Positions 15,495-48,886 are shown, numbered from the stretch's first letter. The stretch is DNA of 64,000 bases from Macrostomum lignano (GCA_002269645.1 NIVC01002437.1:62001-126000), one strand, 5' to 3'. Translations and numbers: made by a program. Notes: generated by a model not told the origin, from the letters alone.

Positions 15495-16800
15495 ATGCTT
15501 CTTGGCGTCGCAGCGTACTGCACAGTCGTGGCCGTCATCTTATCAAAAACTTTGGCCAGCGATCCAAAATTTGGTCAGCTAGACAACGCGTGGTAAGGCG
15601 AAAGCATTAGCGTTAATTCCCAGTCGATTGCTTTTTAAAATGAACAAACCAATCATCGCTGCAGGCCACACCAGTCTGGTTACTTGGAGAAAGGTGGAAA
15701 GGTGCAAAAGGATTATAAACCGAATTCCGAGCCCTCACAACAGTCAGTCAACAGTCAAGGCCTGTCTGAATCGCTGCCAACTCAAAAACCGACGACTCTG
15801 CAGTACCGCGAGCGGTGCTGGCGCGCGAATTTCAGCAGCCCGGAGCGCCGCCCGGTCGACCACACGCCGCGGCCGTTCCTGCTCGGCGAATCTGCCGCTC
15901 GGTGCCGCGGCGACATCTTCCTGCTGATAGCCGTGCAGTCGGCGGTGCAGCACCGGGCCCGCCGCGACCTGATCCGCGCCACCTGGGCCGCCGTCACCAA
16001 CATCGGTGGCGACCGACTCCAGACGGTGTTCTTCGTCGGAACGACAAACGACAAACGACAAGCGGAGGCGCTGCGTCGAGAGAGCGACAGTCGAGCTGAC
16101 ATTGTGCAGGCCGACTTCGTGGACACCTACCGGAACCTCACCTATAAGCACCTGTACGCGCTCAGGTGGATCGCCGAGTCCTGTCGCTCGGTGCGCTACG
16201 TCATGAAGGTCGACGACGACGTTGTGCTGAATGTGTTCAGGCTGCGGGAGTCTCTGCGCGAGCTGGTCGGCTCGAGGACCGACGACTTCTTCTACTGCCA
16301 GGTGCGCGGTACAACGTTCGATGGCTGATTTGCTTCATTTGCTCACATTAAACGGGACTATCAAAATAATACTCGTATCTCTTCTTTTGTTGTAGGTGAG
16401 CCAGGTAAAGCCGATTCGAAACAAAAAGATAAAGTGGCACGTGACCTACGAGGAGTACCCGGACGATCGCTACCCTGACTACTGCAAGGGCTTCGGCTAC
16501 GTGATGAGCTTCGGTCTGATTGAGAAGCTGCACCAGTGCGCCAAGTGGCGGCGGTACTTCTGGATCGACGACGTGTTCGTGTCGGGGGACCTGGCGAGCG
16601 CGCTGGGAGCTCCGCGCATCCAGTGGGAGGACGGCTGGGGCGCCAAGCGGCTGCACCCTCGGCTGGCGGGTCCGGAGGCGAACCAGATGGTGCTGGCCAA
16701 CGCTGGTTCGAATGCAGTTGCGCCTTCGTTGAATCGGCGAGTGTGGCGAGCCATCGTCAGGTTCAGCGACTGGGGCTGGGAGAACGGCCTTGGCGGTTGA
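15495..16800 (+). CDS. GT31 beta-1,3-galactosyltransferase-like protein, paralogue 1 (type II membrane)
   Basis: Exons 15495-15592, 15665-16301 and 16396-16800 join in frame at GT/AG. Signal anchor MLLGVAAYCTVVAVIL; GT31 motifs LLIAVQS...RRDLIRATW, DFVDTYRNLTYK, MKVDDD (DxD), YPDYCKGFGYV, DDVFVSG. The true start may lie further upstream. Confidence 0.88.
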
Positions 16801-18303: not shown

Positions 18304-19642
18304 ATGCTCCTGGGAGTGGCAGTGTACTGCTCTTCAGTCGTGCTGATCATCCTGTCAACAACATCCGCCAGCAGCCCTCAGCCTATAAACGACATAGTCA
18401 GCATGTGAGAGCCTGCTAAATCTAGATCAAATTATTAACAGTATGTTGCCATGCCAACTGCACGAAAAGCATTTCTCCGTTCACCGCAGGCCACAACAGC
18501 CCAGCACTGTGGAGACGGACAGCAAAGCTACAAAGAATTTCCAACAAAATCGTCAGCCCACGCTGAATGCTGGCCACTCAATTGGCCAAAATCCGTCTAC
18601 ATCGCACTCGGTCGACAAAGACTTGAAGACTTCACCGACGACTCTGCAGTACCGCGAGAGGTGCTGGCACGCGAATTTCAGCAGCCCGGAGCGCCGCCCG
18701 GTCGACCACACGCCGCGGCCGTTCCTGCTCGGCGAATCTGCCGCTCGGTGCCGCGGCGACATCTTCCTGCTGATAGCCGTGCAGTCGGCGGTGCAGCACC
18801 GGGCCCGCCGCGACCTGATCCGCGCCACCTGGGCCGCCGTCACCAACATCGGTGGCGACCGACTCCAGACGGTGTTCTTCGTCGGAACGACAAACGACAA
18901 ACGACAAGCGGAGGCGCTGCGTCGAGAGAGCGACAGTCGAGCTGACATTGTGCAGGCCGACTTCGTGGACACCTACCGGAACCTCACCTACAAGCACCTG
19001 TACGCGCTCAGGTGGATCGCCGAGTCCTGTCGCTCGGTGCGCTACGTCATGAAGGTCGACGACGACGTTGTGCTGAATGTGTTCAGGCTGCGGGAGTCTC
19101 TGCGCGAGCTGGTCGGCTCGAGGACCGACGACTTCTTCTACTGCCAGGTACGAGACGCTCTGATTTTAGTAGGATTTCGTATCTACATTGATTGAGCGTC
19201 AATGTTAATGCATTGCTCGATCCTCTAGGTGATTAGGTCAAAGCCCATAAGAAATCGTCGGCACAAGTGGTACGTGGCCTACGAGGAGTGGCCAGGCGAT
19301 CTCTACCCGCACTACTGCAAGGGCTTCGGCTACGTGATGAACTTCGGTCTGATTGAGAAGCTGCACCAGTGCGCCAAGTGGCGGCGGTACTTCTGGGTCG
19401 ACGACGTGTTCGTGTCGGGGGACCTGGCGGTCGCACTCGGGGCTCCGCGCATCAAGTGGGAGGACGGCTGGGGCGCCAAGCGGCTGCACCCTCGGCTGGC
19501 GGGTCCGGAGGCGAACCAGATGGTGCTGGCCAACGCGGATGGGAACTTCATGGTGCCTTCGTTGAATCGGCGAGTGTGGCGAGCCATCGTCAGGTTCAGC
19601 GACTGGGGCTGGGAGGACGGCGATGCAGTCTATTCGGAATAG
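18304..19642 (+). CDS. GT31 beta-1,3-galactosyltransferase-like protein, paralogue 2
   Basis: Exons 18304-18404, 18442-19147 and 19229-19642 have the same intron positions and phases as paralogue 1, and the same GT31 motifs. The start may extend upstream (acceptor near 18219). Confidence 0.88.
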
Positions 19643-19862
19643 TGTCCCGATGCTTTATCAGGGACTGCTATGGTAAATTTATATCGCAGAGGTCCCAGGT
19701 TTTATGTAGTTTTATGTAACGAATCTTCTGAATTAAAAGAAAGCATGTTTTACTGAGGTGCACTGCACAAATGCAGCAAGCTTTTTTCATAACTCGCTAG
19801 GTCTCAAACAAACACATTTTTGGGTGGAAATTTTCGTCGTTCCTTACAGATAGAGGCGTAAA

Positions 19863-21017
19863 GGGGATGTCAACTTAAGCACCAGAATGGAGCCCGAAGT
19901 TCAGCTCCGGACCAAACCGACTGCAATCGATAACTTGTCGGCCCAGACGACTAGAATCGCCGAGACATCCCATCCGGCTCCCTTCCTTGGGGTCCCAGGG
20001 GATAAAGGGGATAAAATGGGGATCTCATGTCAACTTAAGGCTCTGGAATGGAGCCCGAAGTTCAGCTCCGGACCAAACCGACTGCAATCGATAACTTGTC
20101 GGCCCAGACGACTAGAATCGCCGAGACATCCCATCCGGCTCCCTTCCTTGGGGTCCCAGGGGATAAAGGGGATAAAATGGGGATCTCATGTCAACTTAAG
20201 GCTCTGGAATGGAGCCCGAAGTTCAGCTCCGGACCAAACCGACTGCAATCGATAAGTTGTCGGCCCAGACGACTAGAATCGCCGAGACATCCCATCCGGC
20301 TCCCTTCCTTGGGGTCCCAGGGGATAAAGGGGATAAAATGGGGATCTCATGTCAACTTAAGGCTCTGGAATGGAGCCCGAAGTTCAGCTCCGGACCAAAC
20401 CGACTGCAATCGATAACTTGTCGGCCCAGACGACTAGAATCGCCGAGACATCCCATCCGGCTCCCTTCCTTGGGGTCCCAGGGGATAAAGGGGATAAAAT
20501 GGGGATCTCATGTCAACTTAAGGCTCTGGAATGGAGCCCGAAGTTCAGCTCCGGCCCAAACCGACTGCAATCGATAACTTGTCGGCCCAGACGACTAGAA
20601 TCGCCGAGACATCCCATCCGGCTCCCTTCCTTGGGGTCCCAGGGGATAAAGGGGATAAAATGGGGATCTCATGTCAACTTAAGGCTCTGGAATGGAGCCC
20701 GAAGTTCAGCTCCGGACCAAACCGACTGCAATCGATAAGTTGTCGGCCCAGACGACTAGAATCGCCGAGACATCCCATCCGGCTCCCTTCCTTGGGGTCC
20801 CAGGGGATAAAGGGGATAAAATGGGGATCTCATGTCAACTTAAGGCTCTGGAATGGAGCCCGAAGTTCAGCTCCGGACCAAACCGACTGCAATCGATAAC
20901 TTGTCGGCCCAGACGACTAGAATCGCCGAGACATCCCATCCGGTTTCAAGTGACGAAGCTCTATTCTATTCGAATATCGCATTAGCGGGTGTATTTTATT
21001 TTAGCTATTATATATTG
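19863..21017 (+). repeat. Left TIR (1155 bp): 6 full plus 1 partial 161-bp units and ~75 bp unique inner segment
   Basis: Period 161 (ORF starts 19887, 20048, 20209...). The inner unique part ggtttcaagtgacgaagctctattc...gctattatatattg is mirrored at 24805-24880. Confidence 0.95.
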
Positions 21018-21257
21018 TTTGCATTGTAATATTTCCGTCGTTTAATTTTTCCGGATTTTTGAGAATGTTTTCGCGGTTTTGATTTGACCACTTTAGGCGA
21101 GAGATTTTTGATACTGTGCGTCAAGTATTTGTAGCATTAGTTTAAGTGATATATTTTAAGTGATATATTAATGAAGTTAAGGTTTTGGTCAGTTTTTCTT
21201 ACTTAGTTTTATGACAGGTGCAGATTTGTTGCAGATTGCGTTTTATACTTGCTAGTA

Positions 21258-24194
21258 ATGTCCGATTTTACTTGCTCTCAATGTGGTCATCAATTCAGCA
21301 AAGCAGCCAATTTGAACCGACATCTCGAAACGACTAGATGTGGTCGCTGCTCATCTGAATCGTCTGGAGCCTTCGCGCCTCCGAGAAACGCACGAGAGGC
21401 GCTTCAGTTTCTTGCGGTCGGTGGTAAGTATGTGAAAGTTTTTTTGAACCCAAACCTTTTTCCACGAACCGCAAATGAGAAGGAGTTCAAACGTATTTGC
21501 GGTCTTAGCTATAGTGATTTCGATAGCTTCTCAGAAATGTTACCAGAAGTATCTCGCCTTCGTATTTTGACAAAGCCATCTCGAATATTTTTGTACCTGA
21601 AGAAGCTTCGCCAAGGTTGCAGCTTTCAATCATTAGCTTTCGATTTCAACATTTCTGCCCAAAGAGCATGCGACATTTTTTGGGAGATTGCCAAGGAGCA
21701 GTACCTACGGGATCCATATCAACCGAGGTCGATAGCGTCGACTCCGATTCAGACTCTGCTTGAGGAAAATGTAGTACGCGATCAATTTATTCTCGGTGTA
21801 TTTCACACACTACTCAAAGGCAAGAAGCTTGTTCTTCTAGTGGGTGATCATACTTACTTTTATCTCCCTAAGAGCAGCTCACACCACACGCAAATTCGAA
21901 CTTACTTTTCCGGCAAGAAAATGAATGTGAACAAAAAAATGGCGGTTGTCAACAGTAGAGGAAAAATTATCTACACCGCTCCCCTTACCGCCGCTATCTC
22001 GCCAACAATGGGCGATGGGAATTTGACTGCAATGCAAGTTGACATGGAGGCTGAAGGACTAATAGAGCCCACTTTGTTGCGCATTCTGTGCTCTGTACAG
22101 AAAGATTATCACGTTATTGGCATTTTCGACAAAGGTTACAGCCACCAACTTTGTTCACCAACTTCGGTTAACTTCCGCGACTTTATAGAGACTAATAGTA
22201 AAGGCTGCACGACGCTTCTATTTCCGACCAGTCCAGGTGACCGAGTTCTAAACGAGCAGTTTGAATTTGTAAATAATGAGGCTCCTGTTGGTGACCGATC
22301 AATACCAGGAAAGCTTACATCAATCGAAGCAAATACAAGTCGCTGCGCTACGCTTTTCCGTTATCTCGTAGAATGTAGCTTTGCTGCAATCAAGCAGGAC
22401 AAATGCATAAATGAGCGACAGGAGCCGTACCAATGGCTACATGCCCCAGAGTTTACCGAACGCAGCCGGCTCGATGTTGTTATTGAAAACTCCATGGCAA
22501 AATTCAACCGTTCGCATCCAGGATTTCAAGCTACAAGGAGTCTGCCGCCGTCATGGTCAGATTGCTCCATGTTCGAATACGGACGGAACTTTGCTAAACG
22601 TCTTTTCATTGCGAATGAGCTAGACGAAATTGAGCAACTTGAGTACAATTGCGATTTGACTCGAATACCAACGAGTTCTACCCGAAAATGGACAGCAGTG
22701 GATCCCCTGGACCCTGAAAGTTCAGGGTTCCCCAGCGTTGACGAAAGAAATCTGGAAGAGCTTAGCATCGGCCCATACCACGTTCTTCAGTCAAAACGCT
22801 ACATCGAAAACGTCAGAGTTCATGAGGTGCTCAGTAGCTACGCTGGAGACTCGTGGCGCGATTTCGAATTGTTGATTTCTGAACTGCCAAGCCATTTAAA
22901 ATGCTGGAAGTTTCATCAGCGAGCGCCACCAAAGGGGTGGAGCAGTAAGTTTGGAGAATGGAGGCCATCTTGGATATATTTAGCCGTTCTTCATTCCCGT
23001 CATCGGTCAAAAACTTACCGAGTTGTCCTTCGTATTTGCGAAACTGCAAGTGGTAACCGATTCGGATTTCGTTACTCGGGGCTGCTGCGTCTGCATGGCT
23101 ACTTTTCATCCTCAAAGGCCGGAAGCAGGACAGCAGGGTGTGACAGTCATGTTATGGCTGTGGTTAGAATGCTAGGCTGTTATGCATATCACCCCGAAAG
23201 CTACAACATGTGCGGCAGCAGCTTCCGATTTATTGACAGTGCTTTGCCAAAAGCACTGATTGCCAATCTTTACAATGATCAATCTGGTGGTCATCCAGCT
23301 CCAAATGCACCTCGCAGAGACAGTGCTGAATCGCAGCAAGATGAACAGAGGCACAGTTCAAATGCTACTGGTTCATTGAATTCGCCGAAGAAGTTATTTG
23401 GGTTGCCAAATAATGGCCTGCAGTGCTACGCAAATGCAGCAGTGCAATTGTTTCTCTGCCTGCATTCTAATGGATGCATTTTAAAAGAGACTAGCAACGA
23501 CCAAGTCCATCGAGAGCTGCTTCGTCTTCTGACGGAGATGCAACAGCGGTCTGCAACAGTCACTCCACTGTTAACGGCAGTTCGGTTGCAACATCCAGAT
23601 TCATTTCAAACAAATCAGCACCATTGCGTCAACGAATTTGTTCAAACGCTTCTAATACATCTGGAATTTCTGTCATCAGATGCTTTCACAGAATTTTCAC
23701 TCATTCAAACTTGTCGGGATTGCCAGCGCACAAGTGCTGAAGTTCCTGTTGGCACAATCGATAACAGAGTGATTTGCATTCCTCTCTGTCAATTTGAGCG
23801 CTCAATTGTCAGTTTAGACAAAATCTTCTGCGCTTTTGTCGCTCCTCAGGTAGTGAAATGTTCGGACGCCAATTGCCTGGGCGATTGTAATCAAGAGATC
23901 GTAGTAACACCTGGAAAGTTTACCCTGATATATCTTGATCGTGCTAGTATGGATGGCCACCTTAAGCTTCAAACTCCTGTAAGCTTTTCTTCAAGGTCAG
24001 GGGGTGTTTCTACACTTGGTAAGCCAGTGGCCACAATATCACACCATGGAAACCGACTGAAATCGGGACATTTCACAGCAAGCGTACTGAGCTGTGTGTG
24101 GACGAGAATTGACGACATGAAAGTTACGTCAGACTATAACCCGTTCGTACGTGAGCCTGAGTGCATCGTGCTCGTTGCACTTTTAAACTCGTAA
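21258..24194 (+). CDS. Fusion protein: Zn-finger + HTH + DDE transposase (IS5/PIF-Harbinger/ISL2EU/Spy-type) + SWIM-like segment + USP/peptidase C19 deubiquitinase domain
   Basis: Uninterrupted ORF (track 21249-24194; first ATG at 21258). CSQC-x12-H finger; IFLYLKKLRQGCSFQSLAFDFNISAQRACDIF (HTH); catalytic candidates VGDHTY (D at 21846), IFDKGY (D at 22128), RYLVECSF (E at 22371). USP Cys box GLPNNGLQCYANAAVQ (C at 23424), His box SHHGNRLKSGHFTA (H at 24069), WTRIDDMKV (D at 24111/24114). Confidence 0.88.
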   Translation: MSDFTCSQCGHQFSKAANLNRHLETTRCGRCSSESSGAFAPPRNAREALQFLAVGGKYVKVFLNPNLFPRTANEKEFKRICGLSYSDFDSFSEMLPEVSRLRILTKPSRIFLYLKKLRQGCSFQSLAFDFNISAQRACDIFWEIAKEQYLRDPYQPRSIASTPIQTLLEENVVRDQFILGVFHTLLKGKKLVLLVGDHTYFYLPKSSSHHTQIRTYFSGKKMNVNKKMAVVNSRGKIIYTAPLTAAISPTMGDGNLTAMQVDMEAEGLIEPTLLRILCSVQKDYHVIGIFDKGYSHQLCSPTSVNFRDFIETNSKGCTTLLFPTSPGDRVLNEQFEFVNNEAPVGDRSIPGKLTSIEANTSRCATLFRYLVECSFAAIKQDKCINERQEPYQWLHAPEFTERSRLDVVIENSMAKFNRSHPGFQATRSLPPSWSDCSMFEYGRNFAKRLFIANELDEIEQLEYNCDLTRIPTSSTRKWTAVDPLDPESSGFPSVDERNLEELSIGPYHVLQSKRYIENVRVHEVLSSYAGDSWRDFELLISELPSHLKCWKFHQRAPPKGWSSKFGEWRPSWIYLAVLHSRHRSKTYRVVLRICETASGNRFGFRYSGLLRLHGYFSSSKAGSRTAGCDSHVMAVVRMLGCYAYHPESYNMCGSSFRFIDSALPKALIANLYNDQSGGHPAPNAPRRDSAESQQDEQRHSSNATGSLNSPKKLFGLPNNGLQCYANAAVQLFLCLHSNGCILKETSNDQVHRELLRLLTEMQQRSATVTPLLTAVRLQHPDSFQTNQHHCVNEFVQTLLIHLEFLSSDAFTEFSLIQTCRDCQRTSAEVPVGTIDNRVICIPLCQFERSIVSLDKIFCAFVAPQVVKCSDANCLGDCNQEIVVTPGKFTLIYLDRASMDGHLKLQTPVSFSSRSGGVSTLGKPVATISHHGNRLKSGHFTASVLSCVWTRIDDMKVTSDYNPFVREPECIVLVALLNS

Positions 24195-24804
24195 AAGCAT
24201 TTTTAGCGAAAATACAATTGTTTTAAGCGAGTGTACTGTACGTTTTGTATTGCAGATTTTAAAGGACATGCAGATTAAGAAACAATGTCATCTCACGCAT
24301 TCTTTACGTACCATAGGTTACATGTGAAGATAATTCAGACTGACATCAAATAACAAAAGCTTTGAATTAGTTGTTTCAATTTCTTTTAGACTCACAATTA
24401 ACTAAAAATTGGAAGTATTTTTTACTGAAGCAAAGAACTTAAACCCAAAAACCGTTTCTTAGGACTGAGAAACTTTTGCAATTATGATTTTACTAAGCTT
24501 TGCGTGAGAGGCGTTACTTTATTTGCTTAAAAACGTGTGCTGCTTTGCATGACATGCTTTGTTTTTATTACTTTGATAACTTGTACAGCTTTGCATGATA
24601 TGCTTTGTATCCATTACGTCATAACTTGTACAGCCTTGCGTGATATTCTTTATTTTACCAATATACATGGTTTCGGTTTATCGTCAAAAGTTCTGCTTAC
24701 TAATAACCAAACGAATTTACAAGTTAATTTTTTCAAACTGAGTTTCCAGATCAGCATTTTTAACAGGTTTCGATACGAGCAAATCATTTTTATTACTTAA
24801 CAAT

Positions 24805-26925
24805 CAATGTATAATAGCTGAAATAAAATACACCCGCCAATGCGATATTCGAATTGAATAGAGCTTCGTCACTTGAAACCGGATGGGATGTCTCGGCGAT
24901 TCTAGTCGTCTGGGCCGACAACTTATCGATTGCAGTCGGTTTGGTCCGGAGCTGAACTTCGGGCTCCATTCCAGAGCCTTAAGTTGACACGAGATCCCCA
25001 TTTTATCCCCTTTATCCCCTGGGACCCCAAGGAAGGGAGCCGGATGGGATGTCTCGGCGATTCTAGTCGTCTGGGCCGACAAGTTATCGATTGCAGTCGG
25101 TTTGGTCCGGAGCTGAACTTCGGGCTCCATTCCAGAGCCTTAAGTTGACATGAGATCCCCATTTTATCCCCTTTATCCCCTGGGACCCCAAGGAAGGGAG
25201 CCGGATGGGATGTCTCGGCGATTCTAGTCGTCTGGGCCGACAAGTTATCGATTGCAGTCGGTTTGGTCCGGAGCTGAACTTCGGGCTCCATTCCAGAGCC
25301 TTAAGTTGACACGAGATCCCCATTTTATCCCCTTTATCCCCTGGGACCCCAAGGAAGGGAGCCGGATGGGATGTCTCGGCGATTCTAGTCGTCTGGGCCG
25401 ACAAGTTATCGATTGCAGTCGGTTTGGTACGGAGCTGAACTTCGGGCTCCATTCCAGAGCCTTAAGTTGACATGAGATCCCCATTTTATCCCCTTTATCC
25501 CCTGGGACCCCAAGGAAGGGAGCCGGATGGGATGTCTCGGCGATTCTAGTCGTCTGGGCCGACAAGTTATCGATTGCAGTCGGTTTGGTCCGGAGCTGAA
25601 CTTCGGGCTCCATTCCAGAGCCTTAAGTTGACATGAGATCCCCATTTTATCCCCTTTATCCCCTGGGACCCCAAGGAAGGGAGCCGGATGGGATGTCTCG
25701 GCGATTCTAGTCGTCTGGGCCGACAAGTTATCGATTGCAGTCGGTTTGGTCCGGAGCTGAACTTCGGGCTCCATTCCAGAGCCTTAAGTTGACATGAGAT
25801 CCCCATTTTATCCCCTTTATCCCCTGGGACCCCAAGGAAGGGAGCCGGATGGGATGTCTCGGCGATTCTAGTCGTCTGGGCCGACAAGTTATCGATTGCA
25901 GTCGGTTTGGTCCGGAGCTGAACTTCGGGCTCCATTCCAGAGCCTTAAGTTGACATGAGATCCCCATTTTATCCCCTTTATCCCCTGGGACCCCAAGGAA
26001 GGGAGCCGGATGGGATGTCTCGGCGATTCTAGTCGTCTGGGCCGACAACTTATCGATTGCAGTCGGTTTGGTCCGGAGCTGAACTTCGGGCTCCGTTCCG
26101 GGGCCTTAAGTTGACATGAGATCCCCATTTTGTCCCCTTTGTCCCCTGGGACCCCAAGGAGTGGAGCCGGATGGGATGTCTCGGCGATTCTAGTCGTCTG
26201 GGCCGACAACTTGTCGATTGCAGTCGGTTTGGTCCGGAGCTGGACTTCGGGCTCCATTCCAGGGCCTTAAGTTGACATGAGATCCCCATTTTATCCCCTT
26301 TATCCCCTGGGACCCCAAGGAAGGGAGCCGGATGGGATGTCTCGGCGATTCTAGTCGTCTGGGCCGACAACTTATCGATTGCAGTCGGTTTGGGCCGGAG
26401 CTGAACTTCGGGCTCCATTCCAGAGCCTTAAGTTGACATGAGATCCCCATTTTATCCCCTTTATCCCCTGGGACCCCAAGGAAGGGAGCCGGATGGGATG
26501 TCTCGGCGATTCTAGTCGTCTGGGCCGACAAGTTATCGATTGCAGTCGGTTTGGTCCGGAGCTGAACTTCGGGCTCCATTCCAGAGCCTTAAGTTGACAT
26601 GAGATCCCCATTTTATCCCCTTTATCCCCTGGGACCCCAAGGAAGGGAGCCGGATGGGATGTCTCGGCGATTCTAGTCGTCTGGGCCGACAAGTTATCGA
26701 TTGCAGTCGGTTTGGTCCGGAGCTGAACTTCGGGCTCCATTCCAGAGCCTTAAGTTGACATGAGATCCCCATTTTATCCCCTTTATCCCCTGGGACCCCA
26801 AGGAAGGGAGCCGGATGGGATGTCTCGGCGATTCTAGTCGTCTGGGCCATCAAGTTATCGATTGCAGTCGGTTTGGTCCGGAGCTGAACTTCGGGCTCCA
26901 TTCTGGTGCTTAAGTTGACATCCCC
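24805..26925 (-). repeat. Right TIR (2121 bp): ~75 bp unique inner segment plus 12 full and 1 partial 161-bp units
   Basis: Reverse complement of the left TIR with exactly 6 extra units (966 bp = 6 x 161). Confidence 0.95.
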
Positions 26926-27319
26926 TTTGAATTTATTGCTCCAGCTCTGCGTGGTTGACTCATTGATCGTACAATACGGTAAACTAATACGATAAATGAA
27001 CACTCGAAATAAGCGTGAGAACCTGCTGCAGTTTTTGGTATGAGCGTATATTAGCCATGATTGCTCTGAACGTTTCGAAAGTTAAACTCAGAACTGCCAG
27101 AATATACTCGTAATTGCCGAAAACATGCCTATATTTCTGTATCCCATGTATTGCAATTCCACATACTTTATAAACTTAGGCGAGTTGAGATAACGGGTCA
27201 GATAAAAATAAATTGATAAGCAGGAAAGCTTTTCGAAATAGTCTATGCTAGTTTTGGGAGTTTAAAGGTTCTGCTTAAGCGAGCTGACATGTCATTTAAG
27301 TTTGCTTCATATTGGACAG

Positions 27320-29290
27320 CTAAATCGGAAAGCTAAAATCGGACAGCGAGAGTTGAAATTCCTAGGACATATTCTAACCAGCGAAGGAGTCTAGATCGAT
27401 CCGGAGAAGATACGAAGCATCAAGGACATGCCGCATCCGAACAGTTACTCCCAGATATCTGAAAAAGCCGCGCAACTACAAAGATTTATCGAAGTTCATA
27501 CCAAATTTCTCAGCGCTTGCTTCACCTTTGCGACAGTTACTGAAAAAAGATGTAGCGTGGAACTGGGGAAAACGGCAGGAAGAAGCATATGAAGCAATTA
27601 AGGAATCACTGTGCAAAGCTCCACTATTGGGACAATTTAACCCAGATCAGAGTGTCATTCTAAGTGTAGATGCCAGTAAAGATGGACTCGGAGCCGCTTT
27701 GATGCAAGACGGACACGTCATTGAATACGCATCGTCATCGATGACTCCTGCTCAAAAGAAATATGCTCAAATCGAAAAAGAATTCTTGGCAATAGTCTTT
27801 AGATGTCGCAGATTTCGACAATACTTATGGGGTCGGCACGTACAGGTTGAATCAGATCACAAGCCCCTGCAATTCATTATGAAAAAGCCACTGAGTGAAC
27901 TATCAGCTCGACTGCAGCGACTAGCTTTGAAAATTCAAGAATTCGATCTCAATGTGACGTATGTACCCGGAAAAGAACTATACCTTGCGAATACAATAAG
28001 CCGCGCTTATCTGAAATCCGTACATTCATCCAATGATATTGATGATGACATTCAGTGCCAGACAACTTGCTAAAGGACATCCAGCATCACACAAATGCTG
28101 ACGATTTATGTCATATGCTAAAGGACCAGATTCGAGAGGGTTGGCCAGATGCCAAATCCCAAATAGCTGAAGAACTGAAGCCATTTTGGAATATTCGGCA
28201 TGAACTGATGGAGAATGACAGACTCATATACAAGAGCAGCAAAATATTCATTCCTGATGCAATGCGAAGATAAATGCTTCAAATCCTCCATGAAAGTCAT
28301 CAAGGCGTGGAAAAGACGTTGATGAAGGCTACTGAATCTGTATTTTGGCCTCGAATGCGCCATGACATTGAGCAATACATTTCTTCATGCGAAAAATGCC
28401 AAAGTTACCAAGCTCTTCATCAAAAAGAATCGATGAAAATGGTTGAAATACCTGAGTATCCATTTCAAGAGTGTGGAACTGACATTTTCTATTGGAAAGG
28501 GGAAACACACATTGTCCTGGTTGACAGGTTAAGTCGATGGATCTGCACTGATAAGATCACGACTACATCAGCAGAGTGCGTCATAAAACAGCTGTCACAA
28601 TATTTTGCTACCTATGGTACTCCAGAAGTGATAAGATGTGACAACGGACCTCCATTTGGATCCAACAGGTTTAAAGAGTTTGCTGAACAGAAAGGTATAC
28701 GAATTAGGACATCGTCGCCAAAATATCCACAATCAAATGGCCTATCAGAAAGAGCTGTTCAGACAGTTAAAGGATTTCTAAACAAAGCAGATATAAATTG
28801 TGCATTACTACACTATCGGAATACGCCAATTGAAAGAGGGCTACCGACACCGGCTGAGCTAGTGATGGGACGAAAGCTCAGATATCAACTGCCACTGCCC
28901 ATTGAACAGCTGAAACCAAGACAAGTCTGGACAAAACGTGAACTAGAGATTTTGGCAGAGAAGAACAGTAAACAGGCATTCTACTACAATCGCACTGCAC
29001 AAGACCTACGACCGTTTAAAGAAGGAGATCAGGTGTGGATGCAAGAAGATCGAAGACAATGGATTCCTGCAGAAATCGTGAAACCCGATGTCACTGACCC
29101 AGACAGGTCATACAAGTTCGAACTGCTACAGGTCGTGAATTCAGACGAAATCGCAGATTTCTGGCAAAGCGCAATACAGACCGCAGAATGCAGACCATAC
29201 CAGAGTATTCAAGGATTCAACTACCTAATCAGGATTCTAACAATGGAACGATTCAGACTTACAGCTCAGACGCTCATGCATCCGATATAG
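27320..29290 (+). pseudogene. Decayed Ty3/Gypsy pol fragment (RT end, RNase H, integrase)
   Basis: KFLGHILTSEGV*IDPEKIRSI (RT end, with stop at ~27392); LSVDASKDGLGAALMQ (RNase H); HESHQG...CEKC, GTDIFY, CDNGPPF, GLSERAV (integrase HHCC and D,D,E). Split by stops and frameshifts; 5'-truncated. Confidence 0.9.
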
Positions 29291-29621: not shown

Positions 29622-30440
29622 AGTCACTTCAGCATCCACTGTCACCAGAAGGAAACATCCTGTTAACAGCTCTGTTCACTTCAGCATCCACTGTCACCAG
29701 AAGGAAACATCCTGTTAACAGCTCTGTTCACTTCAGCATCCACTGTCACCAGAAGGAAACATCCTGTTAACAGCTCTGTTCACTTCAGCATCCACTGTCA
29801 CCAGAAGGAAACATCCTGTTAACAGCTCTGTTCACTTCAGCATCCACTGTCACCAGAAGGAAACATCCTGTTAGCCTCTGATCACTTCAGCATCCACTGT
29901 CACCAGAAGGAAACATCCTGTTAGCCTCTGATCACTTCAGCATCCACTGTCACCAGAAGGAAACATCCTGTTAGCCTCTGATTACTCCAGCATCCACTGT
30001 CACCAGAAGGAAACATCCTGTTAGCCTCTGATTACTCCAGCATCCACTGTCACCAGAAGGAAACATCCTGTTAGCCTCTGATCACTCCAGCATCCACTGT
30101 CACCAGAAGGAAACATCCTGTTAGCCTCTGTTCACTTCAGCATCCACTGTCACCAGAAGGAAACATCCTGTTAGCCTCTGATCACTCCAGCATCCACTGT
30201 CCCCAGAAGGAAACATCCTGTTAACAACTCTGTTCACTTCAGCATCCACTGTCACCAGAAGGAAACATCCTGTTAGCCTCTGATCACTTCAGCATCCACT
30301 GTCACCAGAAGGAAACATCCTGTTAGCCTCTGATTACTCCAGCATCCACTGTCACCAGAAGGAAATATCCATCCTGTTAGCCTCTGATCACTTCAGCATC
30401 CACTGTCACCAGACGGAAACATCCTGTTAGCCTCTGATTA
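29622..30440. repeat. 50-52 bp minisatellite (cacttcagcatccactgtcaccagaaggaaacatcctgttagcctctg)
   Basis: About 16 tandem copies; the first few are 52 bp (ttaacagctctg), later ones 50 bp. Confidence 0.95.
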
Positions 30441-30929
30441 CTGGCGCTCCTCTGAAATGACAGAAAGCACCCCTATAGAAAAATGTATAGATTTAATTGG
30501 CTTATGACTTACGCGAGTACTAACAGCAAGTTTTGCGGCATCAGCAACATGTTGCTTATCCGATATCCAATATATTTCACAAATGAGGCTTGCAAGCCTA
30601 TTTCAATGGCTAATCCGAAGCGAAATCCTTTGCTGATCTGCTCATTTAAACAGCAAGGAAAGCGGGTTATAAGTTGTACAGAGAAAGTTTTTTTACACCG
30701 ATAAACCCGAAAGCTAAGCGCTGGGAGACAGATTAACCATAATTGTATGCGCTACAGCGTCAAGTGAGGAAACGCGAAGCAAAATATCATCAATGGCATT
30801 TTAGCTAGCGCAATTGTGGCTTTGTTAAATAATAATTTGATTGCGGAAAATTTCAAATTTCATTAACCACTAATGCTCATGGAAACTCAATATAACGGCA
30901 TAAGCCATTGTAAGCGGCTATATGAATAT

Positions 30930-32496: not shown

Positions 32497-35400
32497 TCAG
32501 AAGGTTTTCCTGTGAATTGACCGGGCGCCCTCCTCGTCGTACTCTTTCTTGCTGACCCACATTCGCCGGAACGTGTCCAGCGCTGCCAGAATGGAGCCGC
32601 CAATCCAAGTGGAGTAGAGGCGCTCCTGCGGTGCAGAAATTTTCAACCGATTGTCCTTGGGCACCAGGCGCTTCAGCTCCGCCAGAAGCCTGTCGCCGAA
32701 TCCTGCAGTAATTTGGGTGGGTCTTATGTAGGATTTATTAGTAGAATCCTATTTTATTCATTCGAGTGGGGTTGTCGGGGATTGGATGTACATTGAGGGG
32801 AGTGAGGTTGATGAGGATTGGCTGTACATTGAGGGGAGTGAGGTTGATGGGGATTGGGTGTACATTGAGGGGAGTGAGGTTGATGAGGATTGGGTGTACA
32901 TTGAAGGGAGTGAGGTTGATGGGGATTGGCTGTACATTGAGGGAGTGAGGTTGATGAGGATTGGGTGTACATTGAGGGGAGTGAGGTTGATGGGGATTGG
33001 GTGTACATTGAGGGGAGTGAGGTTGTCGAAGATTGGGTGTACATTGAGGGGAGTGAGGTTGTCGCAGATTGGGTGTACATTGAGGGGAGTGAGGTTGATG
33101 AGGATTTGGTGTACATTGAGGGGAGTGAGGTTGATGAGGATTGGGTGTACATTGAGGGGAGCGAGGTTGATGGGGATTGGCTGTACATTGAAGGGAGTGA
33201 GGTTGATGGGGATTGGCTGTACATTGAGGGAGTGAGGTTGATTAGGATTTAGTGTACATTGAGAGAAGTGAGGTTGATGGGGATTGAGTGTACATTAAGG
33301 GGAGTGAGGTTGTCGAAGATTGGGTGTGAATTGAGGTGAGTCAGGTTATGAGGATTGGGTGTACACCACAGATTCTAGCTATTTTTAGTATCTGTGGTGC
33401 ACACTAGGGGGAGTGAGGCTGTGTGTACATTAAAGCAGGGGTTCGCTAGGAATGAAAGTACATTGGGGGTGGGGTTCGGAGACTTGGTGTACATTGGCGG
33501 CAGGGATTCGCCAGCAGGACTCACCTCTAAACAGCGTGGAGCCGCCCGACACAACAATATTGGCGTACAGCAGGCGTCTCAAATCCATATCGGATCGCTG
33601 AATAGAATAGGCCAGCACCTCGTGGATGCCTTCCCATTCTTCGCCGACAAGTTCAGGCCTAAACAGCAGCTCGGGAGCGCGGAATGCGGCTGCATTGACC
33701 TCCAGTTGAGACCCATCGGGCAGGGAGTAGGTGACCCGTTCCGGATCAAGTTTCTCCTCCGTGACAGGATTAGCCGATACGTAGCAGGCTCGCTCCTTGA
33801 CTTGGCGTACAATTTCCAGCTCAGCGGAGGTGTGAAAACAGGCTCCCTCCTTGCGCAGCAGCAGCTGCAGATAGCGAGTGACATCGCGGCCGGCAATGTC
33901 GGTCCGCATGACCGCGTGCTGCAGGGCGAAGCCCTCGTAGATCGGCACAGCGTGGGTGACGCCGTCGCCGGAGTCCAGCACCACCCCGGTGGTGCGGCCG
34001 GTGGCGTACAGGGACAGCACCGCCTGCATAGACATGAACAGGCCCGGGACGCCGAGGGTTTCGAAAAAAATCTCGGCCGTTTTCTCGCGATTTCTGGTTG
34101 GATTTTTTTGTTGTATAGTTAGGCTGCGGCGACTCACTGGCACTTTTAGAATACTAGGAATACTACTTGTTAGTAGTTAGCTGGTTAGTGTGGAAAGGAC
34201 GAATCTAGCACATACAATCTTCTGTTTGTACGTTCAATAACTGTGGCTCTGAGAATGCCTTACTCATAATTGAGTCTTGAAAGCAGTTCCCGGGAATCGC
34301 CCTCAGACCCTCCCAAAGAATCGCCCTCAATCTCTCTCCCAAAGAATCGCCCTCAGAACCCTCCCAAAGAATCGCCCTCGGACCCTTCCCAAAGAATCGC
34401 CCTCAAACCCTCCCAAAGAATCGCCCTCAGACTCTCCCAGAGAATCGCCCTCAGACCCCTCCCAAAGAATCGCCCTCAGACCCTCCCAAAGAATCGCCCT
34501 CAATCTCTCTCCCAAAGAATCGCCTCAGAACCCTCCCAAAGAATCGCCCTCAGACCCCTCCCAAAGAATCGCCCTCAGACCCCTCCCAAAGAATCGCCCT
34601 CATACCCCTCCCAGAGAATCGCCCTCAGACCCCTCCCAAAGAATCGCCCTCAGACCCCTCCCAAAGAATCGCCCTCAGACCCCTCCCAAAGAATCGCCCT
34701 CAGACCCTCCCAAAGAATCGCCCTCAGACCCTCCCAAAGAATCGCCCTCAAACCCTCCCAGAGAATCGCCCTCACCCCCCCCCCCAAAGAATCGCCCTCA
34801 AACCCTCCCAAAGAATCGCGCTCAGACCCTCCCAAATAATCGCCCTCAAACCCTCCCAGAGAATCGCCCTCACCCCCCCCCCAAAGAATCGCCCTCAAAC
34901 CCTCCCAAAGAATCGCCCTCACCCCCCCCCCAAAGAATCGCCCTCACCCCCTCCCAAAGAATCGCCCTCACCCCCTCCCAAAGAATCGCCCTCAGACCCT
35001 CCCAAAGAATCGCCCTCAGACCCTCCCAGAGAATCGCCCTCACCCCTCCCAAAGAATCGCCCTCACCCCCTCCCAAAGAATCGCCCTCAGACCCTCCCAA
35101 AGAATCGCCCTCACCCCCCCAAAGAATCGCCCTCAAACCCTCCCAGAGAATCGCCCTCACCCCCCCCAAAGAATCGCCCTCACCCCCTCCCAAAGAATCG
35201 CCCTCACCCCCTCCCAAAGAATCGCCCTCAGACCCTCCCAAAGAATCGCCCTCAGACCCTCCCAGAGAATCGCCCTCACCCCCTCCCAAAGAATCGCCCT
35301 CACCCCCTCCCAAAGAATCGCCCTCAGACCCTCCCAAAGAATCGCCCTCAAACCCTCCCAAAGAATCGCCCTCACCCCCCCCCCCAAAGAATCGCCCTCA

Positions 35401-41679: not shown

Positions 41680-43138
<1,459 letters not shown>

Positions 43139-43417
43139 AAAAAAGCAGAAATAGATACTGCACCGGAAAGCAAGTTTTACATGTTCATGAGTAGGTAAAA
43201 GAAAAATAGGAAGCACAGCCTGAAACTTAGGCTGAGACGAAAACTATTGGACTCTGTGAGAAAGAAAAGAAAAGTCTAGAATAACAGAGCCAACAGGCTT
43301 TAGAGCTGCTGTGCACAGAAACAACACTTAATATATTCATTTCTATATATAGTTCGAAATGGAGACAAGACCAGCAGAAACAGAGTCTAAACAACGCATT
43401 GGTTTGACAATAACAAG

Positions 43418-46585: not shown

Positions 46586-46967
46586 AGATGTTAACAAATA
46601 TCGCTAACAATATTTTTTTCAATACGAGTTAATGCACTGTTGCAAAAGTACTTTATCTATCGTGTAAATACTATACAAAAGGCATGCGAACAATATGTAA
46701 AAACTGATTCGGTTTAGTACAACAAATATCTGCCGCTGTGCTGCATCTGTAAGAAAATCTGTAATCAAACGATTTGAGTCACAAGAACAGCTGACTGGAT
46801 TTCTACAGGAATGCCAAGTATGGCAATACTATACAAAATGTGTAGCTGTGAACGCATCGAGGCGTGAATCTTGATAATTTTGTTCACTATTGAACTGTAC
46901 AGCTGTTAAAAATTCTTACTCGGAAAGTTCTACTAAAAGAAACATACAGTTTTCCTGATTGCTTTGC

Positions 46968-48005: not shown

Positions 48006-48886
48006 GCTTGATCCCTATACTAAAAATTATATCATATTTTATTAATATAATTAATATAATTAATATAATTAATGTAAATATAATTAATTAAGCAATTATA
48101 TTCCCAGCACGTCAAGAGTTTCTTAACATTTTTTCATTTTCAACCCATCAAATCATTCTTGAAGGAATCTGTTGGGAGATCCTACATGTGCCTTATTATA
48201 CCAGACCCCAGTGCATGTCAAGATCAATGGGAGTCCCTGGAACACGAATAAGGATTAGCTGTTGAGTACAGGTGATCAGTTTAATCAAAGAATTTTACAA
48301 AATTCTTTCAAAGAATTCTACATTTCCGAAATCTCCATTTTCAAGACCACCTCTTGTTAGGAAACAGGGAAATTTTTGTCACTCCATATCCTGGTTCCGG
48401 GCCTCCATGGCCTCAGGATCTCATTGGGTGCAGGCAGTCCAATCAAGGTTGCCACCCGCCAGTATGAGGAAGGTAAAACTTGAGTCCAAAATAATCTTCC
48501 CAAGACTCCGAACTCAAGCGCACCGACCATGATCAAAACGTTGATCCTCGTCCACCGGACTTCTCCTCCAACTCCGAGCCAACTTCAAGGACCGCAGAGG
48601 CAGTAAAGTTGTCCAGCCAGTAGTCCCAACCTGTCCACTTGACGACCGGCCCAAATTGGACAAGAAATCGGTTGCTTCTCTCATCGAAAAAGATAGATTT
48701 TTTAAACCTGTATTATACTCGGGTATTTTAGTCTGCACTTTCCTTGTCTGAGGTATTAACAGAGGGATATCGGATAAGTTGATAGCTTTCTGCATGACCA
48801 GGATGTAAGTAACGTAAAGGTCATCAGCAGATTAATAGGCCTACAATATCTCATTCGATATTGCACTATATTATTTTGACAACTAA

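What the first reader, a model, noticed from the sequence alone, without database searches (positions are those of the whole stretch)
21258..24194. DDE transposase fused in one ORF to an intact-looking USP (peptidase C19) deubiquitinase domain
Seen in sequence: one stop-free ORF between the TIRs. The N-terminal ~600 aa carry a Zn finger, an HTH and DDE motifs (GDHTY / FDKGY / LVE). The C-terminal ~270 aa carry, in the right order, a Cys box (GLPNNGLQCYANAAVQ), a Q..EF box (NQHHCVNEF, with Cys where USPs have QQDA.EF), two Zn-ribbon Cys pairs (CRDC, CSDANC), a His box (HHG..LKSGHFTA) and W..IDD. Established knowledge: this motif order defines USP/C19 proteases; other eukaryotic DNA transposons and Helitrons carry Ulp1/C48 or OTU proteases. 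I do not know of a described PHIS/Spy element with a fused USP, but I could not search. Inference: the element may deubiquitinate itself to avoid degradation, or remove chromatin ubiquitin (e.g. H2A/H2B-ub) to counter silencing, or the protease may process the polyprotein.
Basis: partly seen in the sequence, partly recalled or inferred. Interest (0 to 1): 0.93.

Follow-up and report, generated by a model that had tools for sequence, protein, structure and literature searches.

The report
Transposase fused to a deubiquitinase domain
A young, intact DNA transposon in an animal genome encodes one 978-residue protein that joins an IS5/Harbinger-type cut-and-paste transposase to a ubiquitin-specific protease with all catalytic residues in place. 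The same fusion recurs in several distantly related elements from marine samples, so the protease looks like a working part of the transposon, not an accident.

Summary
Window 21258-24194 (+) is one stop-free 978-codon ORF.

- **Protease part.** Residues 715-958 match Pfam UCH/peptidase C19 above the curated cut-off. An AlphaFold model (pLDDT 87) hits only USP catalytic domains in the PDB (E about 1e-16). Cys723, His938, Asp952 and four zinc-ribbon cysteines are present.
- **Transposase part.** The N-terminal ~680 residues carry a C2H2 finger, an HTH and a conserved D197/D291/E372 triad. They are homologous to DDE_Tnp_4 (PIF/Harbinger/IS5, "PHIS") transposases.
- **The element.** It spans 19860-26928. 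Its 1.2 and 2.1 kb inverted ends are built from 161-bp tandem repeats, and it is flanked by AAA|...|TTT with no duplication, as Spy transposons are.
- **Not a one-off.** At least six diverged relatives (17-35% identity in the protease part, where measured) carry the same transposase-USP fusion with catalytic residues intact. In one related cluster the USP part shows dN/dS 0.4-0.5.
- **Prior art.** DUB or ULP proteases fused to transposases are known (Ginger1, MULEs, Helentrons). A C19 + IS5-like transposase in Trichomonas was mentioned in 2010. This Spy-like USP-bearing family appears undescribed.
- **Function.** Untested. My favoured reading is that the USP protects the transposase from ubiquitin-dependent removal.

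The parts
19860..26928 (+). Whole transposon (7,069 bp): long inverted ends, one ORF, no second ORF
   Evidence: The inverted repeats end at 19860 and 26928. Only one copy lies in the window.
19857..19859 (.). AAA immediately outside the left end (left half of a putative AAA|TTT target, or the outermost bases of the TIR)
   Evidence: The junction reads cgtAAA|GGGGATGTCAAC. The left end of relative L001 reads cttAAA|GAGGATGTCAAC.
26929..26931 (.). TTT immediately outside the right end (right half of a putative AAA|TTT target)
   Evidence: The reverse complement reads ttcAAA|GGGGATGTCAAC. No direct duplication flanks the element.
19860..21031 (+). Left inverted arm (1,172 bp): terminal GGGGATGTCAACTTAAGC, a 161-bp tandem array at 19867-20943 (6.7 copies), and an 88-bp unique inner part
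   Evidence: The terminal motif ATGTCAACTTAAG recurs once per unit, 7 times here.
24791..26928 (-). Right inverted arm (2,138 bp): the same structure, with the array at 24879-26921 (12.7 copies). It is exactly 6 units (966 bp) longer than the left arm.
   Evidence: The terminal motif has 11 exact copies here.
21258..24194 (+). Single ORF of 978 aa plus stop: transposase-USP fusion protein
21267..21332 (+). C2H2 zinc finger (aa 4-25)
   Evidence: Pfam zf-C2H2 is sub-threshold at E=0.002. The finger is conserved in P0001 and in N-terminal or upstream parts of relatives.
21567..21683 (+). Helix-turn-helix of the PIF/Harbinger type (aa 104-142)
   Evidence: HTH_Tnp_4 scores 23 bits against a cut-off of 27. 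The model is helical here.
21825..22397 (+). DDE catalytic core (aa ~190-380): D197 (21846-21848), D291 (22128-22130), E372 (22371-22373), plus K226/227, GDGNL (D253) and R368-x3-E372
   Evidence: Motif positions are. The motifs are conserved across about 25 relatives. D197 lies on a strand, D291 follows a strand and E372 lies in a helix of the model. Remote hits are DDE_Tnp_4 proteins.
22398..23285 (+). Family-specific C-terminal transposase region (aa ~381-676). It includes a remnant of a CxC...CxH (SWIM-like) zinc motif at aa ~612-645 (23091-23192); this copy keeps only GCDSH.
   Evidence: The model is confident here, with pLDDT mostly above 90. Most relatives carry C..C..R...CC.H, while this copy has S..SSK..GCDSH.
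23286..23390 (+). Disordered Ser/Gln/Pro-rich linker (aa ~677-711)
   Evidence: pLDDT is below 50 in both models.
23400..24191 (+). USP / peptidase C19 catalytic domain (aa 715-978): Cys723 (23424-23426), His938 (24069-24071), Asp952 (24111-24113), and zinc ribbon C819/C822/C868/C873

Best explanation
**What it is.** This is a recently inserted, apparently autonomous cut-and-paste DNA transposon of the IS5/PIF-Harbinger ('PHIS') superfamily with Spy-like hallmarks.
- Its single gene encodes a modular protein. A C2H2 finger and an HTH presumably bind the terminal motif, which recurs once in every 161-bp unit of the long inverted ends.
- A DDE (RNase-H-like) core cuts and joins DNA.
- A family-specific C-terminal region follows, then a ~35-residue disordered linker tethers a catalytically competent USP deubiquitinase.
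- The USP is a conserved, selected component of a whole family of such transposases, not a passenger.

**Most likely role (inferred, not shown).** The tethered USP removes ubiquitin from the transposase itself or from its partners in the transpososome. This would spare them ubiquitin-dependent degradation or extraction, raising the effective dose and lifetime of transposase at the element's ends.

**Confidence by step.**
- About 0.9 that it is a TE-encoded transposase-USP fusion with an intact active site.
- About 0.8 that the USP is under selection in this family.
- About 0.35-0.4 for self- or transpososome protection as the specific role.
For: **Shown**
- One 978-codon ORF.
- UCH profile above the cut-off.
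- USP fold in a confident model, with only USP catalytic domains among the 50 listed PDB hits.
- Cys, His and Asp boxes and the zinc ribbon are aligned and conserved.
- The transposase part has 114 homologues. Remote ones are bona fide DDE_Tnp_4 + HTH_Tnp_4 proteins. The D/D/E columns are conserved.
- The arms are 98-99% identical, with AAA|...|TTT junctions.
- A ~20-bp terminus is shared with the element encoding the 51%-identical transposase P0001.

**The fusion recurs** in single ORFs:
- P0010 (1048 aa), P0022 (955 aa), P0033 (1119 aa, 19 contigs), P0047 (1639 aa) and P0186 (1010 aa).
- Fragments P0007, P0068 and P0084.
- P0176, where the USP lies N-terminal of the DDE core.

**Selection in the P0010 cluster**
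- dN/dS is 0.15 for the transposase and 0.38-0.47 for the USP in the two more diverged pairs (excess of synonymous changes, p=0.002 and 0.03).

**Analogy for the proposed role**
- Unrelated transposases have repeatedly acquired OTU or Ulp1 domains (PMC2836005).
- A bacterial toxin uses its own OTU domain for self-stabilisation (title and abstract of bioRxiv 10.1101/2023.02.08.527603).
Against: - No activity, expression or substrate data exist.
- This copy is young, so its intact ORF says nothing by itself about selection.
- The dN/dS evidence comes from a sister cluster. It is weaker for the USP than for the transposase, and it is not significant in the closest pair (0.74, p=0.41).
- The conserved QQD-A-EF box, which contacts the ubiquitin tail in canonical USPs (established knowledge), is QHHC..EF here and in the nearest lineages. 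Ubiquitin may therefore not be the substrate.
- Close USP-less relatives exist (P0003-P0006), so the USP is not essential to this type of transposase.
- Nothing distinguishes self-protection from action on chromatin.
Confidence: 0.55

Rival explanations
1. The USP works on chromatin or the DNA-damage response rather than on the transposase. Delivered to the element's ends by the DNA-binding domains, it would strip ubiquitin from histones (H2A/H2B) or from repair factors such as PCNA. That would open silenced chromatin or steer repair of the excision break and the integration gaps.
For: - The domain is tethered by a flexible linker to a DNA-bound enzyme, which is ideal for local action.
- Bao, Kapitonov and Jurka proposed just this for the OTU and Ulp1 domains of Ginger1: activation of DNA-repair factors during transposition (PMC2836005).
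- SAGA-type USPs acting on nucleosomes are among the structural matches (6t9l, 3mhs), but they rank no better than other USPs.
Against: - The domain shows no specific similarity to histone- or PCNA-directed USPs. The best matches are USP2, USP18, USP46, USP4 and USP21.
- No histone- or PCNA-binding module was detected.
- There are no functional data.
Confidence: 0.25
2. The domain is USP-shaped but does not remove ubiquitin. It would either be specific for another ubiquitin-like modifier, or act mainly as a binding module that recruits the transposase to modified proteins or chromatin.
For: - The QQD-A-EF box is replaced by Q[QH]HC..[ED][FL] in this protein and in P0007, P0014, P0068 and P0084. 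This is a conserved lineage-specific change, not random decay.
- USP18, an ISG15-specific USP, is among the top structural matches.
Against: - The catalytic Cys, His and Asp, the Asn preceding the Cys box and the zinc ribbon are all retained across lineages that are 17-35% identical. That is not expected of a pure binding module.
- Other fusion lineages keep D in the box: P0022 FHDAGEF and P0033 FEDAQEV.
Confidence: 0.12
3. The protease processes the fusion protein itself, releasing transposase and protease as separate proteins in the way viral polyproteins are cut.
For: Viral USP- and OTU-like proteases often double as polyprotein-processing enzymes (PMC9741609 introduction).
Against: - USPs cut after a ubiquitin-like ...GG tail. 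No ubiquitin-like fold precedes the USP (model).
- The only GG in the linker (DQSGG) is not conserved in P0007 (KQSAA).
- Linkers differ completely between lineages.
Confidence: 0.03
4. The fusion is an accident of this copy or of the assembly: a host USP exon captured by chance, or a chimeric contig. The USP would be a functionless passenger.
For: - Only one copy is visible in the 64-kb window.
- The protein itself is absent from the 5.8-billion-protein collection.
Against: - The same architecture occurs in at least six independently assembled, highly diverged lineages, each as a single ORF.
- P0007 spans the junction, matching query residues 636-975.
- The USP is under purifying selection in a sister cluster.
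Confidence: 0.03

Closest known systems
Spy transposons (PHIS superfamily; Han et al. 2014, PMC4122938; cgSpy, PMC11304231)
   Same: - AAA on the left and TTT on the right of the element, with no target-site duplication.
- A single ORF.
- An N-terminal HTH plus a DDE core in a transposase of about 700 aa.
- Highly variable, sometimes kilobase-long TIRs.
- Invertebrate and marine hosts.
   Different: - The extra ~300-aa USP domain. Neither the Spy nor the PHIS papers searched mention any protease or ubiquitin domain.
- D-D-E spacing is 93/80, against the published 79-80/44-62.
- The terminus is GGGGATGT, against GGANNNNG.
- The TIRs are built of 161-bp tandem repeats, whereas published long Spy TIRs show no subrepeat structure.
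- Clade membership was not tested.
Trichomonas vaginalis XP_001314237.1: transposase_11 (pfam01609, IS5-type) + Peptidase C19, noted in Bao, Kapitonov & Jurka 2010 (PMC2836005), citing Gladyshev & Arkhipova 2009
   Same: The same two kinds of domain in one protein: an IS4/IS5-type DDE transposase and a USP/C19 protease. It prompted the same idea, that the ubiquitin pathway is involved in transposition.
   Different: - It is a one-sentence mention of a protist protein. No element structure, family, conservation or catalytic-site analysis is given in what I could read.
- I could not obtain the sequence, so homology to the present family is untested.
Ginger1 transposases with C-terminal OTU or Ulp1 protease domains (PMC2836005)
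   Same: A cut-and-paste transposase with a cysteine deubiquitinase or deSUMOylase appended at the C-terminus of the same ORF, in invertebrates (Hydra, Aplysia, aphid).
   Different: - A different transposase superfamily (Gypsy-integrase-like).
- Different protease families (OTU, Ulp1/C48), not USP/C19.
Helentron/Helitron RepHel proteins with OTU and VTD deubiquitinase domains (PMC9741609)
   Same: A DUB domain embedded in the transposition protein of a DNA transposon, with catalytic residues conserved in autonomous copies. DUB activity was shown experimentally for VTDs.
   Different: - A rolling-circle mechanism (HUH endonuclease and helicase), not DDE.
- Different DUB folds.
Ulp1-carrying Mutator-like elements (cited in PMC2836005: Hoen 2006; van Leeuwen 2007)
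   Same: A DNA transposon carrying a ubiquitin-like-modifier protease. MULE transposases also carry a SWIM zinc finger (own knowledge), a motif type seen here between the DDE core and the USP.
   Different: - Ulp1 is often a separate ORF.
- It belongs to a different superfamily, with 9-12-bp TSDs.
Cellular USPs (USP2, USP21, USP12/46, USP15, USP18)
   Same: - The fold matches: TM 0.65-0.69 over the whole domain, E about 1e-16.
- The Cys, His and Asp boxes and the four-Cys zinc ribbon in the fingers are all present.
   Different: - Only 16-20% identity.
- A compact ~265-residue domain.
- An altered QQD box.
- Covalently attached to a transposase.

Membership tests
USP / peptidase C19 (Pfam UCH PF00443) | Profile match above the curated threshold | tested here: met
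   40.4 bits against a cut-off of 23.9, E=3e-10, profile positions 2-237 of 254. The family profile against PDB USP15 and USP2 gives E=1e-38.
USP / peptidase C19 (Pfam UCH PF00443) | Cys box with the catalytic Cys and an upstream Asn; His box (GH[YF]); Asp/Asn box | tested here: met
   The Cys box is N718-x4-C723, the His box SGH938F and the Asp box RID952D. All align with the corresponding boxes of 14 USP domains.
USP / peptidase C19 (Pfam UCH PF00443) | Fingers-palm-thumb fold | tested here: met
   The AF2 model has pLDDT 86.7. All 50 listed Foldseek hits are USP catalytic domains, E down to 1.2e-16, TM 0.6-0.69.
USP / peptidase C19 (Pfam UCH PF00443) | QQDAxEF box | tested here: not met
   The box reads NQHHCVNEF, with His and Cys in place of Asp and Ala. 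P0007, P0014, P0068 and P0084 share the change. The box is not part of the catalytic triad, so this bears on substrate recognition rather than on membership.
USP / peptidase C19 (Pfam UCH PF00443) | Isopeptidase activity on ubiquitin conjugates | not testable with these tools
   This needs Ub-AMC, Ub-PA and di-ubiquitin assays.
PHIS superfamily (IS5 / PIF-Harbinger / ISL2EU / Spy; Pfam DDE_Tnp_4) | DDE_Tnp_4 / HTH_Tnp_4 profile match | tested here: inconclusive
   - There is no DDE_Tnp_4 hit on the protein itself, and HTH_Tnp_4 scores 23 bits against 27.
- 4 of 30 family members hit DDE_Tnp_4 (P0006 at 32 bits, above 24.8) and 5 of 30 hit HTH_Tnp_4.
- Ten of ten tested remote phmmer hits (E 1e-8 to 1e-5) are DDE_Tnp_4 proteins at 52-79 bits.
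PHIS superfamily (IS5 / PIF-Harbinger / ISL2EU / Spy; Pfam DDE_Tnp_4) | Signature D..K..D..D..P..R-x3-E (PMC4122938) | tested here: met
   D197, K226/227, D253 (GDGNL), D291 and R368-x3-E372 are present and conserved in the family. Some spacings exceed the published ranges.
PHIS superfamily (IS5 / PIF-Harbinger / ISL2EU / Spy; Pfam DDE_Tnp_4) | RNase-H-like DDE fold | tested here: inconclusive
   - The model is confident at pLDDT 87.5. D1 lies on a strand, D2 follows a strand and E lies in a helix.
- The best PDB match is Tn5 transposase at only E=0.016, TM 0.21-0.29.
- No PHIS-type transposase appeared among the PDB hits.
Spy group | Insertion between AAA and TTT without a target-site duplication | tested here: inconclusive
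   - Both junctions of the window copy and the left junction of L001 read AAA|G[GA]GGATGTCAAC. There is no TSD.
- No empty site was available: the paralogous duplication stops 240 bp short. AAA/TTT could therefore be the outermost TIR bases.
Spy group | Single long ORF with an N-terminal HTH | tested here: met
   There is one ORF. Only 226 bp and 597 bp of unique sequence lie between it and the inverted arms.
Spy group | D(79-80)D(44-62)E spacing | tested here: not met
   There are 93 and 80 residues between the triad members.
Spy group | Terminal 5'-GGANNNNG-3' | tested here: not met
   The terminus is GGGGATGT, and GAGGATGT in L001. Only the leading G(G) agrees.
Spy group | Placement inside the Spy clade in a DDE-core phylogeny | not tested
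   No reference Spy, ISL2EU, Pangu or Nuwa protein sequences were obtainable.

The most novel reading that the evidence does not exclude
USP-bearing, Spy-like PHIS transposases would form an undescribed and widespread family in marine eukaryotes, in which the built-in deubiquitinase is needed for efficient transposition because hosts restrict transposases through ubiquitination. The lineage-specific change of the ubiquitin-tail-binding box (QQD to Q.HC) would mark a shift in linkage or modifier specificity. Moving the USP within the protein (C-terminal in most lineages, N-terminal in P0176) would show repeated selection for keeping the two activities on one polypeptide.
Probability: 0.3. Interest if true: 0.8.

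Novelty: new variant of a known kind. Interest (0 to 1): 0.62.

Why it matters
Transposases from at least four unrelated superfamilies have independently picked up ubiquitin or SUMO proteases: Ginger1, MULE, Helentron and now PHIS/Spy-like. This points to a general, still uncharacterised layer of host control of transposition that acts on proteins rather than on RNA or chromatin.

This family is a clean test case:
- The gene is a single ORF.
- The active-site cysteine is obvious (C723).
- Close USP-less relatives exist as natural controls.
- Spy-type elements already work in two-plasmid assays in human cells (PMC11304231).

A point mutant could therefore show directly whether a transposon needs to remove ubiquitin in order to move. 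If the USP raises the stability or activity of the transposase, that would also interest people engineering transposon vectors.

Tried and rejected
1. Word-indexed protein search, with the protein and with a 30-sequence alignment. It returned only P0001 and P0002, with no names or taxa.
2. JGI metagenome scans with the protein and with a two-sequence alignment. Pattern hits were found but no confirmed relative. A3 was too diverse to derive search patterns.
3. IMG/VR scans with the protein and with P0010. Nothing was found, so there is no sign of a viral carrier.
4. TIRs and AAA|TTT junctions in the relatives' contigs (L002-L009, L013). No convincing terminal inverted repeats were found. The contigs probably end inside the elements or break in repeats.
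5. A paralogous empty site within the window. The Galactosyl_T duplication (15788-16788 against 18634-19621) ends 240 bp before the insertion.
6. dN/dS within the P0033 cluster. The loci retrieved by exact-protein look-up have identical ORFs, so they carry no information. I used the P0010 cluster instead.
7. Reference Spy protein sequences from paper supplements. None are held. Gladyshev & Arkhipova 2009 is not in the library.
8. Foldseek of the transposase part. There was no significant PDB match.
9. Rfam scan of the window. No hits.
10. A self-cleavage site. The linker 'DQSGG' was considered and rejected because it is not conserved.


Full report
**1.

- The window contains one ORF at 21249..24194 (+). 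It is 981 aa from a TTG and 978 aa from the first ATG at 21258. I number from the ATG, because the nearest relative starts at the same Met.
  - GDHTY (D197), FDKGY (D291), RYLVE (E372)
  - the Cys box, with C723 encoded by TGC at 23424-23426
  - NQHHCVNEF; CRDC and CSDANC
  - SGHFT (H938) and RIDD (D952)
- The ORF lies between two long inverted arms, 19860-21031 and 24791-26928, which are 98-99% complementary.

**2. The C-terminal domain is a USP**

- Pfam UCH (PF00443) matches residues 715-958 with 40.4 bits (curated cut-off 23.9, E=3e-10), covering positions 2-237 of the 254-position model.
- A single-sequence search of PDB sequences is only marginal (USP12, E=0.09). A profile of 14 related USP domains hits 113 USP chains, led by USP15 and USP2 at E=1e-38.
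- An AlphaFold2 model of residues 682-978 is confident (pLDDT 86.7, pTM 0.84). Only the first ~30 residues and one loop are disordered.
- Foldseek against the PDB gives 370 matches at E<=0.001. All 50 listed are USP catalytic domains: USP2, USP18, USP46, USP4, USP21, USP15, USP8, USP7, SAGA Ubp8 and others. E reaches 1.2e-16 and TM is 0.6-0.69.
- In the alignment, the catalytic Cys, the His of GH[YFW], the Asp/Asn box and the zinc-ribbon Cys pairs line up in nearly all sequences.
- The one clear deviation is the QQDAxEF box. It reads Q[QH]HC..[ED][FL] in this protein and in P0007, P0014, P0068 and P0084.

**3. The N-terminal ~680 residues are an IS5/PIF-Harbinger-type transposase**

- Pfam gives only sub-threshold matches on the protein itself: HTH_Tnp_4 at 23 bits against 27, and zf-C2H2. 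DDE_Tnp_4 does not hit.
- An exhaustive phmmer search of 1.84 billion representative proteins found 132 hits. Of these, 114 match only the transposase part.
- Closer relatives (28-51% identity over the bulk of the transposase part) define a family with these conserved features:
  - D.TY, K.....K, GDGNL, D.GY, EAN..R..T..R...E, NR.H..F
  - a C-terminal CxC...CxH (SWIM-like) motif
- Four of 30 family members reach Pfam DDE_Tnp_4, and five reach HTH_Tnp_4.
- All ten tested remote hits (E 1e-8 to 1e-5, aligned to residues ~70-250) are canonical DDE_Tnp_4 proteins, and most also carry HTH_Tnp_4.
- The PHIS signature D..K..D..D..P..R-x3-E of Han et al. (PMC4122938) is recognisable: D197, K226/227, D253, D291 and R368-x3-E372.
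- A model of residues 1-701 is confident (pLDDT 87.5). It places D197 on a strand, D291 just after a strand and E372 in a helix.
- The PDB search returned nothing significant. The best match is Tn5 transposase at E=0.016.
- Superfamily assignment is therefore well supported by transitive homology, not by a direct profile or fold match.

**4. The element**

- The inverted repeat begins at 19860 and ends at 26928. The junctions read cgtAAA|GGGGATGTCAACTTAAGC... and ...GCTTAAGTTGACATCCCC|TTTgaa, with no direct duplication.
- Each arm is mostly a 161-bp tandem array: 6.7 copies on the left and 12.7 on the right. An inner unique part of about 88 bp follows. The arms differ by exactly six units.
- The terminal motif ATGTCAACTTAAG recurs once per unit, with 18 exact copies against 0 expected. 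This makes the arrays a plausible set of reiterated transposase-binding sites (inference).
- The metagenomic contig L001 encodes P0001, the 51%-identical transposase. It carries cttAAA|GAGGATGTCAACTTAGGC about 800 bp upstream of its ATG. The ~20-bp terminus is conserved, and the sequences diverge outside AAA. This independently validates the end of the element.
- All three observable ends abut AAA.
- Spy transposons insert between AAA and TTT without a TSD, have a single ORF, an N-terminal HTH, a transposase of about 700 aa, and TIRs from 5 to 1,474 bp (PMC4122938, PMC11304231). All of this agrees.
- Three things do not agree:
  - the D-D-E spacing (93/80 against 79-80/44-62)
  - the terminal consensus (GGGGATGT against GGANNNNG)
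  - the subrepeat structure of the TIRs
- No empty site was available, and I had no reference sequences for a tree. I therefore call it Spy-like and do not file it as a Spy member.

**5. The fusion is a family trait**

- Single ORFs with the transposase followed by a UCH domain:
  - P0010 (1048 aa; a cluster of 20 sequences)
  - P0022 (955 aa; aligned to the query over residues 75-970)
  - P0033 (1119 aa; 19 contigs, including Tara Oceans samples)
  - P0047 (1639 aa; its USP was detected at E=3e-40 by a profile that did not include it)
  - P0186 (1010 aa)
  - fragments P0007 (spans the junction, query residues 636-975), P0014, P0068 and P0084

- USP-domain identity to the window protein, for the members in alignment A2, is only 17-35%. 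Yet nearly all keep the catalytic residues: P0022 lacks some zinc-ribbon cysteines and P0186 has Phe for Tyr after the catalytic Cys.
- In P0176 the order differs: C2H2, then USP (262-502), then HTH/DDE (584-908).
- Close relatives without a USP also exist. P0003-P0006 end just after the SWIM-like motif, and nothing USP-like lies downstream on their contigs.
- Pairwise dN/dS was measured for three members of the P0010 cluster (L007, L010, L011):
  - 0.15 for the transposase part
  - 0.38, 0.47 and 0.74 for the USP part
  - The excess of synonymous change in the USP part is significant in the two more diverged pairs (p=0.002 and p=0.03), but not in the closest pair.
- The USP is thus constrained, but less tightly than the transposase.
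- The window copy itself is young. Its arms are 98-99% identical, so its intactness alone proves nothing.

**6. Mechanism**

Shown:
- One polypeptide combines DNA-binding modules, a DDE core and a USP with a complete active site.
- A ~35-residue disordered linker joins them.
- The architecture is conserved across deep divergence.

Inferred:
- The USP acts locally, on the transposase or on proteins near it. I favour protection of the transposase or transpososome from ubiquitin-dependent degradation or extraction (probability about 0.35-0.4).
  - This is by analogy with the K48-preferring DUBs carried by Helentrons and their proposed protective role (PMC9741609).
  - It also follows a bacterial toxin that stabilises itself with its own OTU domain.
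- Action on chromatin or repair ubiquitin marks, as Bao et al. proposed for Ginger1 proteases, is the main rival (about 0.25).
- The altered QQD box keeps open a different modifier or a binding role (about 0.12).
- Polyprotein processing and chance capture are unlikely (about 0.03 each).

**7. Comparison and novelty**

- Ubiquitin and SUMO proteases fused to transposition proteins are known:
  - Ginger1 (OTU or Ulp1)
  - Mutator-like elements (Ulp1)
  - Helentrons (OTU, VTD)
- The closest precedent is a single sentence in PMC2836005. It reports a T. vaginalis protein with a transposase_11 (IS5-type) domain and a Peptidase C19 domain, credited to Gladyshev & Arkhipova 2009. I could not read that paper.
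- The Spy and PHIS survey papers do not mention any protease or ubiquitin domain.
- Full-text searches for USP or C19 together with transposase found nothing else.
- I could not query Repbase or Dfam.
- I therefore rate this as a new variant of a known kind. The principle (DUB fused to transposase) and even the domain pair have been noticed before. A conserved, widespread, Spy-like family with an intact USP, a linker and a SWIM-like module has not been described in what I could search.

**8. Context**

- The host is an animal. The window also holds two Galactosyl_T exons in a 90%-identical 1-kb duplication, actin exons, a Cys-loop receptor ligand-binding exon, and an LTR-retrotransposon integrase.
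- The relatives come from marine and other metagenome or SRA assemblies, on short contigs without taxonomic labels.

Noticed in passing
window 19867-20943 and 24879-26921: The TIRs are arrays of a 161-bp unit, with 6.7 copies on one side and 12.7 on the other (exactly 6 units apart). Each unit carries the terminal motif ATGTCAACTTAAG. The arrays also generate a ladder of spurious overlapping 122-aa ORFs. Published long Spy TIRs are said to have no subrepeats.
   Followed up: partly
window 23091-23192 (aa ~612-645): Most relatives have a CxC...R...CCxH (SWIM-like) zinc motif between the DDE region and the USP. The window protein has Ser at the first two Cys positions (S..SSK...GCDSH), and P0022 has also lost most ligands. 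Pfam does not call SWIM in any member.
   Followed up: partly
P0176 (cluster of P0017; ENA contig of 3,121 bp): In this relative the USP domain (aa 262-502, with Cys and His boxes present) lies N-terminal of the HTH/DDE core, after a C2H2 finger. This is the opposite order to the window protein.
   Followed up: partly
L007:202-1941 and L002:1568-2929: USP-bearing relatives have a separate upstream ORF (580 and 454 aa) with C2H2 fingers. It is homologous to the N-terminal extension of the USP-less relatives P0003-P0005. It could be an exon split off by an intron or frameshift, or a second protein. The window element has only a short N-terminus with one finger.
   Followed up: partly
L001:2582-2750: The closest relative (P0001) stops at aa 560, but homology to the window protein continues in another frame (ORF 2631-2744, '...NPFGFRYSGLRRLH'). 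That copy has a frameshift or an intron, and the contig ends before any USP.
   Followed up: no
window 15684-16328 and 18443-19195: There are two Galactosyl_T (beta-1,3-galactosyltransferase-like) exons in a 1-kb tandem duplication at 90% identity (15788-16788 against 18634-19621). Both cover only profile positions 1-118 of 195. The transposon sits about 240 bp beyond the second duplicate.
   Followed up: partly
window 28274-29290: An ORF with Integrase_H2C2 and rve domains: a fragment of an LTR retrotransposon just downstream of the element.
   Followed up: partly
window 29624-30442: A 50-bp tandem repeat with 16 copies at 95% identity.
   Followed up: no
window 33430-34143 (-) and 37788-38642 (-): Two actin-family exons on the minus strand, separated by about 3.6 kb that includes a very G+C- and skew-rich proline-rich repeat (34277-35596).
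   Followed up: partly
window 41647-43216 and 56037-57068: Long arrays of a 12-bp repeat (reads as (SIYL)n in translation) in opposite orientations. Several other minisatellites lie at 46959-48011, 50263-50871, 55055-55720 and 58679-60716.
   Followed up: no
window 61881-62723: An exon encoding the C-terminal half of a Cys-loop neurotransmitter-gated channel ligand-binding domain, running into a CT-rich repeat.
   Followed up: partly
window 24542-24656: A 45-bp imperfect tandem repeat (2.5 copies) in the unique region between the stop codon and the right arm.
   Followed up: no
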